From the NCBI GenBank assembly GCA_964057225.1, contig OZ059900.1:12524001-12588000 (forward strand): 64,000 nucleotides of DNA, given 5' to 3'. Each line of letters begins with the position of its first letter. The stretch's first letter is position 1. Made by a program: the position numbers and the translations under genes. This DNA is from Auanema rhodensis. Lineage: Eukaryota > Animalia > Nematoda. Below, one piece after another: positions 2,016 to 2,127 of this stretch. The notes under the pieces were generated by a model. The model had not been told where the DNA came from. It worked only from the letters and a program-made list of their open reading frames with translations, and ran no database searches.

Positions 2016-2126
2016 TTACCTATTAGCCCCCAACACCTAGATGTTGTGGTTTACAGACACACCACGAGGAGGTTAGGTAACAGTTGTAGGAACAACTGGC
2101 CGTATTAACAGGCTTACGGCGGTGTC

Positions 2127-2127
<1 letters not shown>
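2016..2127 (-). ncRNA. HDV-like self-cleaving ribozyme at the retrotransposon 5' end
   Basis: Minus strand: P1 GGACAC / GUGUCU (G1-U wobble); J1/2 with two hairpins (GCCGUA..UACGGC and CAGUUGU..ACAACUG); P2 UUACCUA / UAGGUAA; P3 ACC / GGU; L3 UCCUCGU; single C-G P1.1; P4 CCACAACA..UGUUGGG; J4/2 GCUAA with the candidate catalytic C at 2026. Confidence 0.9.

What the first reader, a model, noticed from the sequence alone, without database searches (positions are those of the whole stretch)
2016..2127. HDV-like ribozyme predicted to cut the element out of the pre-rRNA co-transcript at the insertion junction
Seen: every element of the nested double pseudoknot is present in order on the transcribed strand. 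These are a 6-bp P1 (GGACAC/GUGUCU, G1-U), a 7-bp P2 (UUACCUA/UAGGUAA), P3 ACC/GGU, L3 UCCUCGU, P4, and J4/2 GCUAA with C at 2026. G1 is base 2127, the last base still matching 28S, so cleavage (CAU|GGACAC) would fall at the 28S/element border and the host G could supply the G1-U wobble. Unusual details are a single-pair P1.1 (G followed by U, reminiscent of the one-pair P1.1 of the CPEB3 ribozyme) and a 41-nt J1/2 made of two abutting perfect hairpins. Known: HDV-like ribozymes process R2 and other non-LTR element RNAs out of Pol I transcripts. Inference: this promoterless element is expressed by Pol I read-through plus self-cleavage.
Basis: partly seen in the sequence, partly recalled or inferred. 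Interest (0 to 1): 0.82.

Follow-up and report, generated by a model that had tools for sequence, protein, structure and literature searches.

The report
Self-cleaving ribozyme heading an R4 retrotransposon
The first 112 bases of a jumping gene lodged in a nematode's 28S rRNA gene fold into a hepatitis-delta-type self-cutting RNA that should free the element's RNA from the ribosomal transcript; it is a well-supported new example of something already described for R2, R4 and Dong elements.

Summary
On the minus strand, 2127-2016 contains every part of an HDV-like ribozyme in the right order. Identity to 28S ends exactly at G2127.

The fold is not chance. A strict descriptor finds it as the only hit in 28 kb of real sequence. 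It gives about 3 hits per Mb in shuffles.

The host element is a 4.2-kb R4-type non-LTR retrotransposon (reverse transcriptase plus C-terminal CCHC and restriction-like endonuclease). It sits in a nematode 28S gene, 38 bp downstream of the R2 site, with a 12-bp target duplication.

Three other lineages at about 30% protein identity use the same 28S site and carry the same fold at their 5' ends. One is in this genome and two are on metagenome contigs. Their P1 and P2 sequences are completely different but fully paired, and one P1.1 pair shows a compensatory change.

HDV-like ribozymes at the 5' ends of R4 (Ascaris) and Dong are already published, so this is a new member of a known kind. The long J1/2 and the one-pair P1.1 are within known variation. 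Cleavage itself is untested.

This copy has a broken ORF, while sibling copies with an identical ribozyme are intact. First-stage readers of this scan also noted HDV-like ribozymes on other R4 lineages of this genome.

The parts
2016..2127 (-). HDV-like ribozyme, 112 nt, with predicted cleavage between U2128 and G2127
   Evidence: Direct reading; the descriptor script recovers all helices; weak Rfam matches to drz-agam-1 and HDV-F-prausnitzii
2122..2127 (-). P1 5' strand GGACAC; G2127 is G1
   Evidence: Pairs with 2055-2060, 6 bp including the G1.U wobble
2081..2121 (-). J1/2 insert of 41 nt made of two perfect hairpins
   Evidence: strand folding gives -14.7 kcal/mol, z = -4.0
2074..2080 (-). 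P2 5' strand UUACCUA
   Evidence: 7 Watson-Crick pairs with 2016-2022
2061..2073 (-). P3 (ACC/GGU) enclosing L3 UCCUCGU
   Evidence: This 13-mer is identical in metagenome relative L015 and matches the drz-agam-1 consensus
2055..2060 (-). P1 3' strand GUGUCU
2054..2054 (-). G that forms the single P1.1 pair with C2068 of L3
   Evidence: Sequence; relatives have a G here in all four lineages
2028..2049 (-). P4 stem-loop, 7 bp with one A.G mismatch
   Evidence: Direct reading; the apical 5 bp appear in the MFE fold
2023..2026 (-). J4/2 CUAA; C2026 is the candidate catalytic cytosine
   Evidence: C-N-A-A is present at this place in all four lineages
2016..2022 (-). P2 3' strand UAGGUAA
2127..2138 (-). 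Upstream copy of the 12-bp target-site duplication GTGACGCGCATG
   Evidence: The same 12-mer follows the element's 3' end in L014
2128..4494 (-). 5' part of the interrupted 28S gene; 5.8S and 18S of the same unit lie upstream
   Evidence: Rfam LSU, 5.8S and SSU hits
1722..1980 (-). 110-bp tandem repeat (2.3 copies) in the element's 5' leader
   Evidence: TRF; more copies in sibling elements
1..1598 (-). Start of the element's single ORF (first ATG opening a long frame at 1598). It runs off the window and is broken just outside it by a 2-bp deletion relative to intact siblings.

Best explanation
Window 2127-2016 (minus strand) is the HDV-like self-cleaving ribozyme at the 5' end of a 4.2-kb R4-type non-LTR retrotransposon. 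The element has a single ORF with a reverse transcriptase and a C-terminal CCHC plus restriction-like endonuclease. It is inserted in a nematode 28S gene, 38 bp downstream of the R2 site, with a 12-bp target duplication.

Proposed mechanism:
1. RNA polymerase I reads from the 28S 5' part into the element.
2. The nested double pseudoknot folds.
3. C2026 in J4/2 catalyses scission of the U2128-G2127 bond.
4. This releases element RNA that starts with a 5'-OH G. The folded ribozyme stays on as its 5' module, upstream of the ORF.

Shown here: the fold, its exact position on the junction, its improbability by chance, and its conservation with covariation in four lineages that share the target site.

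Inferred from published R2, R4 and Dong work: Pol I co-transcription and catalysis.
For: - All helices and conserved single-stranded bases are present.
- It is the only descriptor hit in 28 kb of real sequence, against 3.3 per Mb in shuffles. It and its relatives are the only hits in 650 kb of held loci.
- 28S identity ends at G1.
- The element has RT, CCHC and endonuclease, and it has a target duplication.
- Lineage B of this genome (31% protein identity) carries a 71-nt HDV-like fold at its 5' end. Its core sits 2670-2686 nt upstream of the C-terminal protein match in at least 10 copies.
- Metagenome element L059 (31% identity, 28S flanks on both sides) and L015 (29%) carry the fold right after CGCGCAUGA.
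- P1 and P2 differ at nearly every position among the four lineages, yet every pair is standard. The second P1.1 pair is C-G in two lineages and U-A in one.
- Seven unrelated GC-rich contigs that matched the same DNA pattern have no such fold.
- Literature: R2 ribozymes release the element from the 28S co-transcript. R4 (Ascaris) and Dong carry HDV-like ribozymes that cleave at the element's 5' end. P1 is typically 6-7 bp and J1/4 is 0-2 nt (PMC3774820).
Against: - There is no experimental cleavage and no RNA data.
- No Rfam model reaches its gathering score.
- P1 is only 6 bp and P1.1 has a single pair.
- The pseudoknot-free MFE fold pairs L3 CCUCC with the G run of P4, which is a possible competing fold.
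- The ribozyme is 100% identical at all seven lineage-A 5' ends, so there is no covariation within the lineage itself.
- This particular copy has a frameshifted ORF.
- L059 was found with a pattern that fixed P3/L3 and the 28S 10-mer. Only its P1, P2, P4 and J4/2 are independent evidence.
Confidence: 0.85

Rival explanations
1. The fold is a true HDV-like ribozyme by descent but is weak or inactive in this lineage, because P1 has 6 bp, P1.1 has one pair and the J1/2 insert is bulky. The 5' end would then be made another way, or the lineage would no longer move.
For: One-pair P1.1 and 6-bp P1; a competing MFE fold; the window copy's ORF is broken. Some natural R2 ribozymes, such as those of sow bug and horseshoe crab, show no cleavage in vitro (PMC3774820).
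Against: The ribozyme is identical at all seven lineage-A 5' ends. At least two sibling copies have intact 1266-aa open frames at 99-100% identity, which argues for recent activity. All rigidly conserved positions are present. 6-bp P1 stems and J1/4 of 0-2 nt are normal in active R2 ribozymes. CPEB3 works with one G-C plus a U-U in P1.1 (PMC4836649). No splice-acceptor-like motif lies in the first 700 nt that could offer a trans-splicing route.
Confidence: 0.1
2. The main job of the folded 5' module is not release from the rRNA. Instead it protects the uncapped 5' end, helps translation start, or shapes the 5' junction during insertion, with cleavage secondary. This does not exclude the best explanation.
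For: Stable HDV-like folds at the template's 5' end raise insertion efficiency with R2 protein (PMC11331408). In relative L059 the ORF's ATG lies inside P4 of the ribozyme.
Against: In lineage A the first long-ORF ATG is 530 nt downstream of G1. The position of G1 exactly on the 28S border in every lineage is what a release function predicts.
Confidence: 0.04
3. Chance resemblance: the helices are fortuitous complementarities in a 5' leader.
For: Rfam scores are below gathering. The whole-region MFE is unremarkable, z = -1.3.
Against: The descriptor false-positive rate is 0.8-3.3 per Mb, whereas the hit falls exactly on the junction base. The same architecture with covarying stems is found in three other lineages.
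Confidence: 0.01

Closest known systems
HDV-like ribozyme at the 5' end of R4 (Ascaris lumbricoides) and Dong (Bombyx mori), R4 clade (Ruminski et al. 2011 JBC, as cited in Eickbush et al. 2013, PMC3774820)
   Same: Nematode host. The element is a 28S-specific non-LTR retrotransposon with a restriction-like endonuclease and a 12-13 bp target duplication. The ribozyme forms the element's first bases and the cleavage site lies at the element's 5' end.
   Different: The lineage is distant: the nearest database proteins are 29-33% identical. It has a 41-nt two-hairpin J1/2 and a single P1.1 pair. I could not compare directly with the Ascaris R4 sequence, because neither paper nor sequence is held.
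R2 ribozymes (Drosophila, silkmoth, many animals; Eickbush and Eickbush 2010; PMC3774820)
   Same: The same double-pseudoknot fold and the same job, release from the 28S co-transcript. A large J1/2, a variable P4 and a 6-7 bp P1 are all seen in R2.
   Different: The target site differs (38 bp downstream of the R2 site). The protein has no N-terminal zinc finger or Myb domain. Most R2 ribozymes cut 9-36 nt upstream in 28S, whereas here the cut is at the junction.
Rfam drz-agam-1 (RF01787) and HDV-F-prausnitzii (RF02682)
   Same: These are the best Rfam matches. The P3/L3 block, CUAA and P2 align to the drz-agam-1 consensus.
   Different: Scores of 23.5 and 13.7 bits are below the gathering scores of 37 and 44. 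The models cannot place the P1 5' strand across the 41-nt J1/2.
CPEB3 ribozyme
   Same: P1.1 is reduced to one G-C pair plus a non-standard pair (PMC4836649).
   Different: It is intronic in a mammalian gene, is not linked to a retrotransposon and has a short J1/2.

Membership tests
HDV-like self-cleaving ribozymes (structural class) | Nested double pseudoknot with P1, P2, P3, P1.1 and P4 in the canonical order | tested here: met
   The descriptor script recovers all elements at 2127-2016
HDV-like self-cleaving ribozymes (structural class) | Catalytic cytosine in J4/2 (C-N-A-A) just before the P2 3' strand | tested here: met
   C2026-U-A-A; the same motif is present in all four lineages
HDV-like self-cleaving ribozymes (structural class) | Conserved L3 bases (first U and the G that form the reverse wobble, and the C for P1.1), and G at +1 | tested here: met
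   L3 is UCCUCGU; G1 is paired with U2055. The conserved bases are described in PMC3774820.
HDV-like self-cleaving ribozymes (structural class) | Helices supported by covariation among relatives | tested here: met
   P1 and P2 differ in sequence but are fully paired in 4 lineages; P1.1 changes from C-G to U-A. Only four sequences were compared, with no formal statistic.
HDV-like self-cleaving ribozymes (structural class) | Mg2+-dependent self-scission giving a 5'-OH product | not testable with these tools
   Needs a bench assay
Rfam drz-agam-1 (RF01787) | Covariance-model score at or above gathering (37 bits) | tested here: not met
   23.5 bits, E = 0.01; nothing at gathering in the whole window
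R4-type non-LTR retrotransposon | Single ORF with reverse transcriptase followed by a CCHC motif and a restriction-like endonuclease, and no apurinic-type endonuclease | tested here: met
   Pfam RVT_1 on both ORF halves. The C-terminal Cys/His motif and a K-P-D ... E-x-S block are visible in the translation and conserved with L059.
R4-type non-LTR retrotransposon | Fixed 28S insertion site with a target duplication of about 13 bp | tested here: inconclusive
   There is a 12-bp duplication at a fixed site shared by five lineages. A 13-bp duplication is reported for R4 (PMC6895275). The published R4 site sequence could not be read, because the paper is not held.
R4-type non-LTR retrotransposon | Phylogenetic grouping with Ascaris R4 and Dong | not tested
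R2 | Insertion at the R2 site of 28S | tested here: not met
   The junction lies 38 bp downstream of ...UUAAGG/UAGCC
R2 | N-terminal zinc finger(s) proximal to the RT (PMC5035012) | tested here: not met
   Pfam finds only RVT_1 in the 607-aa N-terminal half, and no Cys2His2 pattern is visible in the translation

The most novel reading that the evidence does not exclude
The 41-nt J1/2 insert of two perfect hairpins may be a functional add-on specific to this lineage. It could be a handle for the element's own protein, or a folding timer that sets when cleavage occurs. In addition, G1 coincides with the last base of the target duplication. The element could therefore regain its first ribozyme nucleotide by one-base annealing to the target at each insertion.
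Probability: 0.1. Interest if true: 0.45.

Novelty: new member of a known kind. Interest (0 to 1): 0.27.

Why it matters
It adds a clear, comparatively supported HDV-like ribozyme to the small set known outside R2. It also shows that several distant R4-type lineages competing for one 28S site all keep the ribozyme while freely rewriting P1, P2, J1/2 and P4. That is useful for ribozyme descriptors, because Rfam models miss it. It is also useful for choosing 5' modules in retrotransposon-based gene insertion. It does not change how these elements are understood.

Tried and rejected
- **Rfam:** the gathering search of the window found no ribozyme. Only the permissive search of 251 nt gave weak hits.
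- **MAFFT alignment of the ribozymes (A3):** it is not in structural register, because the long J1/2 and the variable P4 shift the columns. I did not run the count of structure pairs or build a covariance model. Pairs were tabulated by script instead.
- **Fetching the 5' ends of lineages A', C and D:** I did not try to read them another way.
- **Contigs of four more distant protein relatives (P0003, P0004, P0007, P0018):** they hold neither 28S flanks nor an HDV-like fold, and are probably 5'-incomplete or other families.
- **Metagenome pattern scan:** of nine hits, seven are chance matches in GC-rich coding DNA without the fold. One (L061) has the fold but is not an R4 element. There the 10-mer is the 3' acceptor strand of a tRNA(UCA), so L061 was excluded.
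- **C13 and C53 'junctions':** these are only 28S sequence variants.
- **Papers not held:** the R4 paper (PMC307436), Ruminski 2011 (PMC3308841) and the Eickbush 2015 review.

Full report
**Setting.** The window is a eukaryotic rDNA array on the minus strand, with nine intact 6571-bp units plus one interrupted unit at the low-coordinate end. The genome is 181 Mb in 112 contigs. It holds 1267 exact copies of the 22-nt SL1 spliced leader, a nematode hallmark by my own knowledge, so I treat the host as a nematode. Earlier notes of this scan say the same.

In the interrupted unit, identity to intact 28S copies ends at base 2127, in ...GUGACGCGCAUG followed by GACACC. The Rfam LSU alignment also stops there when the region is searched alone.

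**The observation.**
- P1: 2127-2122 with 2060-2055, 6 bp, with G2127 opposite U2055.
- J1/2: 41 nt.
- P2: 2080-2074 with 2022-2016, 7 Watson-Crick pairs.
- P3: ACC/GGU around L3 UCCUCGU.
- A G at 2054 that can pair with the third base of L3, followed by a U that cannot pair. P1.1 therefore has a single pair.
- P4: 2049-2042 with 2035-2028, with one A.G mismatch.
- J4/2: CUAA, with C at 2026.

J1/2 folds alone into two abutting perfect hairpins at -14.7 kcal/mol, z = -4.0.

**Is it chance?** The strict descriptor requires:
- a P1 of 6-7 bp and a P2 of at least 5 bp;
- a P3 of 3 bp and an L3 of the form U.C..G.;
- a G after P1;
- C-N-A-A before the P2 3' strand;
- a J1/2 of up to 60 nt.

It gives a single hit, this one, in window 1-14200 on both strands. 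In 300 dinucleotide shuffles of that stretch it gives 3.3 hits per Mb. The rate falls to 0.8 per Mb when P1+P2 is at least 13 bp, as here. In 650 kb of held loci, the only hits are this ribozyme's copies, its relatives described below, and L061, a hit next to a tRNA that is not part of an R4 element. A hit whose first base falls on the junction base is therefore about a 1e-5 event.

Rfam does not call it at gathering. In a permissive search of 251 nt, drz-agam-1 scores 23.5 bits (gathering 37, E = 0.01). That alignment matches the P3/L3 block, CUAA and P2 but misplaces P1 because of the long J1/2.

**The element.** It runs from 2127 leftward out of the window and is about 4.2 kb long (L014).
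- Its 3' end abuts GUGACGCGCAUG-AAUGG, which gives a 12-bp target duplication.
- The ORF has a reverse transcriptase (Pfam RVT_1 on both halves) followed by a Cys/His motif and a restriction-like endonuclease block.
- There is no zinc finger or Myb hit in the N-terminal half.
- The insertion lies 38 bp downstream of the R2 site.

The element is therefore not R2, since both defining features I could test fail. It fits the R4 type: nematode host, 28S-specific, and a 13-bp duplication reported for R4 (PMC6895275).

The window's copy has a 2-bp deletion in the RT region, just outside the window, relative to its siblings. At least two sibling copies have open frames of 1266 aa at 99-100% identity.

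The 127 nt at the 5' end are 100% identical at all seven lineage-A 5' ends in the genome. Two of these copies follow 28S directly. The other five follow the 3' end of a different R4-type lineage plus the duplicated target, a tandem arrangement.

**Relatives.** The genome holds at least five R4-type lineages whose 3' junctions all end at the same 28S site. Their identities to this element's C-terminal 666 aa are 52, 35, 34 and 31%.

*Lineage B (31%).*
- It begins with a 71-nt HDV-like fold: P1 GGGAACU/GGUUCCC, P2 GUCUU/AAGGC, L3 UUCACGU and CUAA.
- I read this fold in L034 and L048.
- Its core 13-mer lies 2670-2686 nt upstream of the C-terminal protein match in at least ten copies. The degenerate core pattern gives 26 genome hits, against 2 for the reversed control.

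*L015 (metagenome contig).*
- I reached it through the closest sizeable protein hit, at 29% identity.
- It carries the fold right after ...UGACGCGCAUGA between two tandem elements: P1 GCCAGGG/CCCUGGC, P2 of 8 bp, and the same P3/L3 block as here.
- It scores 24-25 bits on two Rfam HDV-like models.

*L059 (metagenome contig).*
- It came from a DNA-pattern scan of metagenomes.
- It is a complete element with 28S on both sides and a 1240-aa ORF, 31% identical over 669 aligned positions.
- Its ribozyme starts right after CAUGA: P1 GGGGAAC/GUUCCCU and P2 GACUCAU/AUGAGUC.

Across the four lineages, P1 and P2 differ at almost every position, yet every pair is standard. G1 is invariant. The first P1.1 pair is always C-G. 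The second is C-G in two lineages, U-A in one, and absent in this one.

Seven GC-rich contigs that matched the same pattern by chance have no fold. One caveat applies to L059: its P3/L3 and the 28S 10-mer were fixed by my search pattern. L015 and lineage B were found independently of the ribozyme sequence.

**Mechanism.** The interrupted unit has its 18S, 5.8S and 28S 5' part upstream on the same strand, at normal spacing, so Pol I read-through into the element is plausible. It is inferred, not shown.

By analogy with R2, where self-cleavage from the 28S co-transcript was demonstrated, and with R4 and Dong, whose ribozymes cut at the element's 5' end (PMC3774820), the fold should cleave between U2128 and G2127. 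That leaves element RNA starting with a 5'-OH G.

G2127 is both the last 28S-matching base and the last base of the target duplication, so its origin cannot be decided. A one-base overlap between the cDNA end and the target would regenerate it at each insertion.

The first ATG opening the long frame is 530 nt downstream of G1, beyond a 110-bp tandem repeat. No splice-acceptor-like motif lies in the first 700 nt.

- A long J1/2 is normal in this class: 216-498 nt in silkmoth R2 ribozymes.
- A P1 of 6-7 bp and a J1/4 of 0-2 nt are typical.
- CPEB3 has one G-C plus a U-U in P1.1 (PMC4836649).
- The hairpins may simply keep a long insert from interfering with folding. With all copies identical, there is no evidence either way.

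**Weak points.**
- There is no cleavage assay and no RNA data.
- The pseudoknot-free MFE fold pairs L3 with the G run of P4, so misfolding is possible.
- The covariation rests on four sequences and a hand-made register.
- Membership in the R4 clade rests on site, duplication length, architecture and host, not on a tree.

**Verdict.** HDV-like ribozymes heading R4-clade elements are published, so this is a new member of a known kind. First-stage readers of this scan had also noted HDV-like ribozymes on other R4 lineages of this genome. I checked that only for lineage B.

Noticed in passing
L061 835-990 (minus strand; metagenome contig Ga0302265_1000539): A minimal HDV-like fold without P4 (835-892) starts directly at the 3' end of a 100-nt tRNA with anticodon UCA. 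ARAGORN calls it tRNA-SeC, and Rfam tRNA-Sec scores 29.8 bits. The contig is AT-rich, and its 8.2-kb locus has only one ORF of 200 aa or more under code 11, which suggests UGA recoding. This fits the published 'theta ribozymes' next to suppressor tRNAs of gut phages (PMC10879173). It is not an R4 element.
   Followed up: partly
G000 C8, C4, C12, C16, C19-C21, C24, C64 (loci L028-L057): At least five R4-type lineages (52, 35, 34 and 31% identical to this one) all end at the same 28S site. Many have intact ORFs of 1264-1304 aa. Lineage A often sits in tandem directly behind a lineage-B element, separated only by the duplicated target.
   Followed up: partly
window 1722-1980; also L004, L005, L008, L009: The 110-bp tandem repeat in the 5' leader varies in copy number between sibling copies. 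About 1.2 kb of extra repeat lies in the copies at C8:12.515 and 12.594 Mb.
   Followed up: no
L014 about 3459 (genome C8:12523959, 40 bases left of the window): This copy's ORF is split by a 2-bp deletion in the reverse-transcriptase region relative to sibling copies, which are otherwise 99% identical.
   Followed up: yes
L059 127-204 and ORF 177-3899: In this metagenome R4-type element the ORF's ATG lies inside P4 of the ribozyme, so the ribozyme and the coding start overlap.
   Followed up: no
G000 C1:10.9-12.3 Mb: More than 20 dispersed copies of a different reverse-transcriptase ORF lie on one chromosome arm. Most have a 1107-aa open frame, 27% identical to this element over about 500 aa. 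The family and its target were not examined.
   Followed up: no
L012 3371-7007 (C8:12507371-12511007): Two 18S genes abut head to tail. One is about 120 nt longer than normal and has a 5.8S-like match inside it, so this is a rearranged unit at the edge of the array.
   Followed up: no
G000 C3:6.74 Mb onward: A tandem array of 252-bp units carries the SL1 spliced-leader sequence, with 1267 exact copies genome-wide.
   Followed up: no
G000 C8:4014065-4014455: A 95%-identical copy of this element's 5' leader lies outside the rDNA. It lacks the first 40 nt (the P1 5' strand and most of J1/2), so it is a 5'-truncated relic.
   Followed up: no
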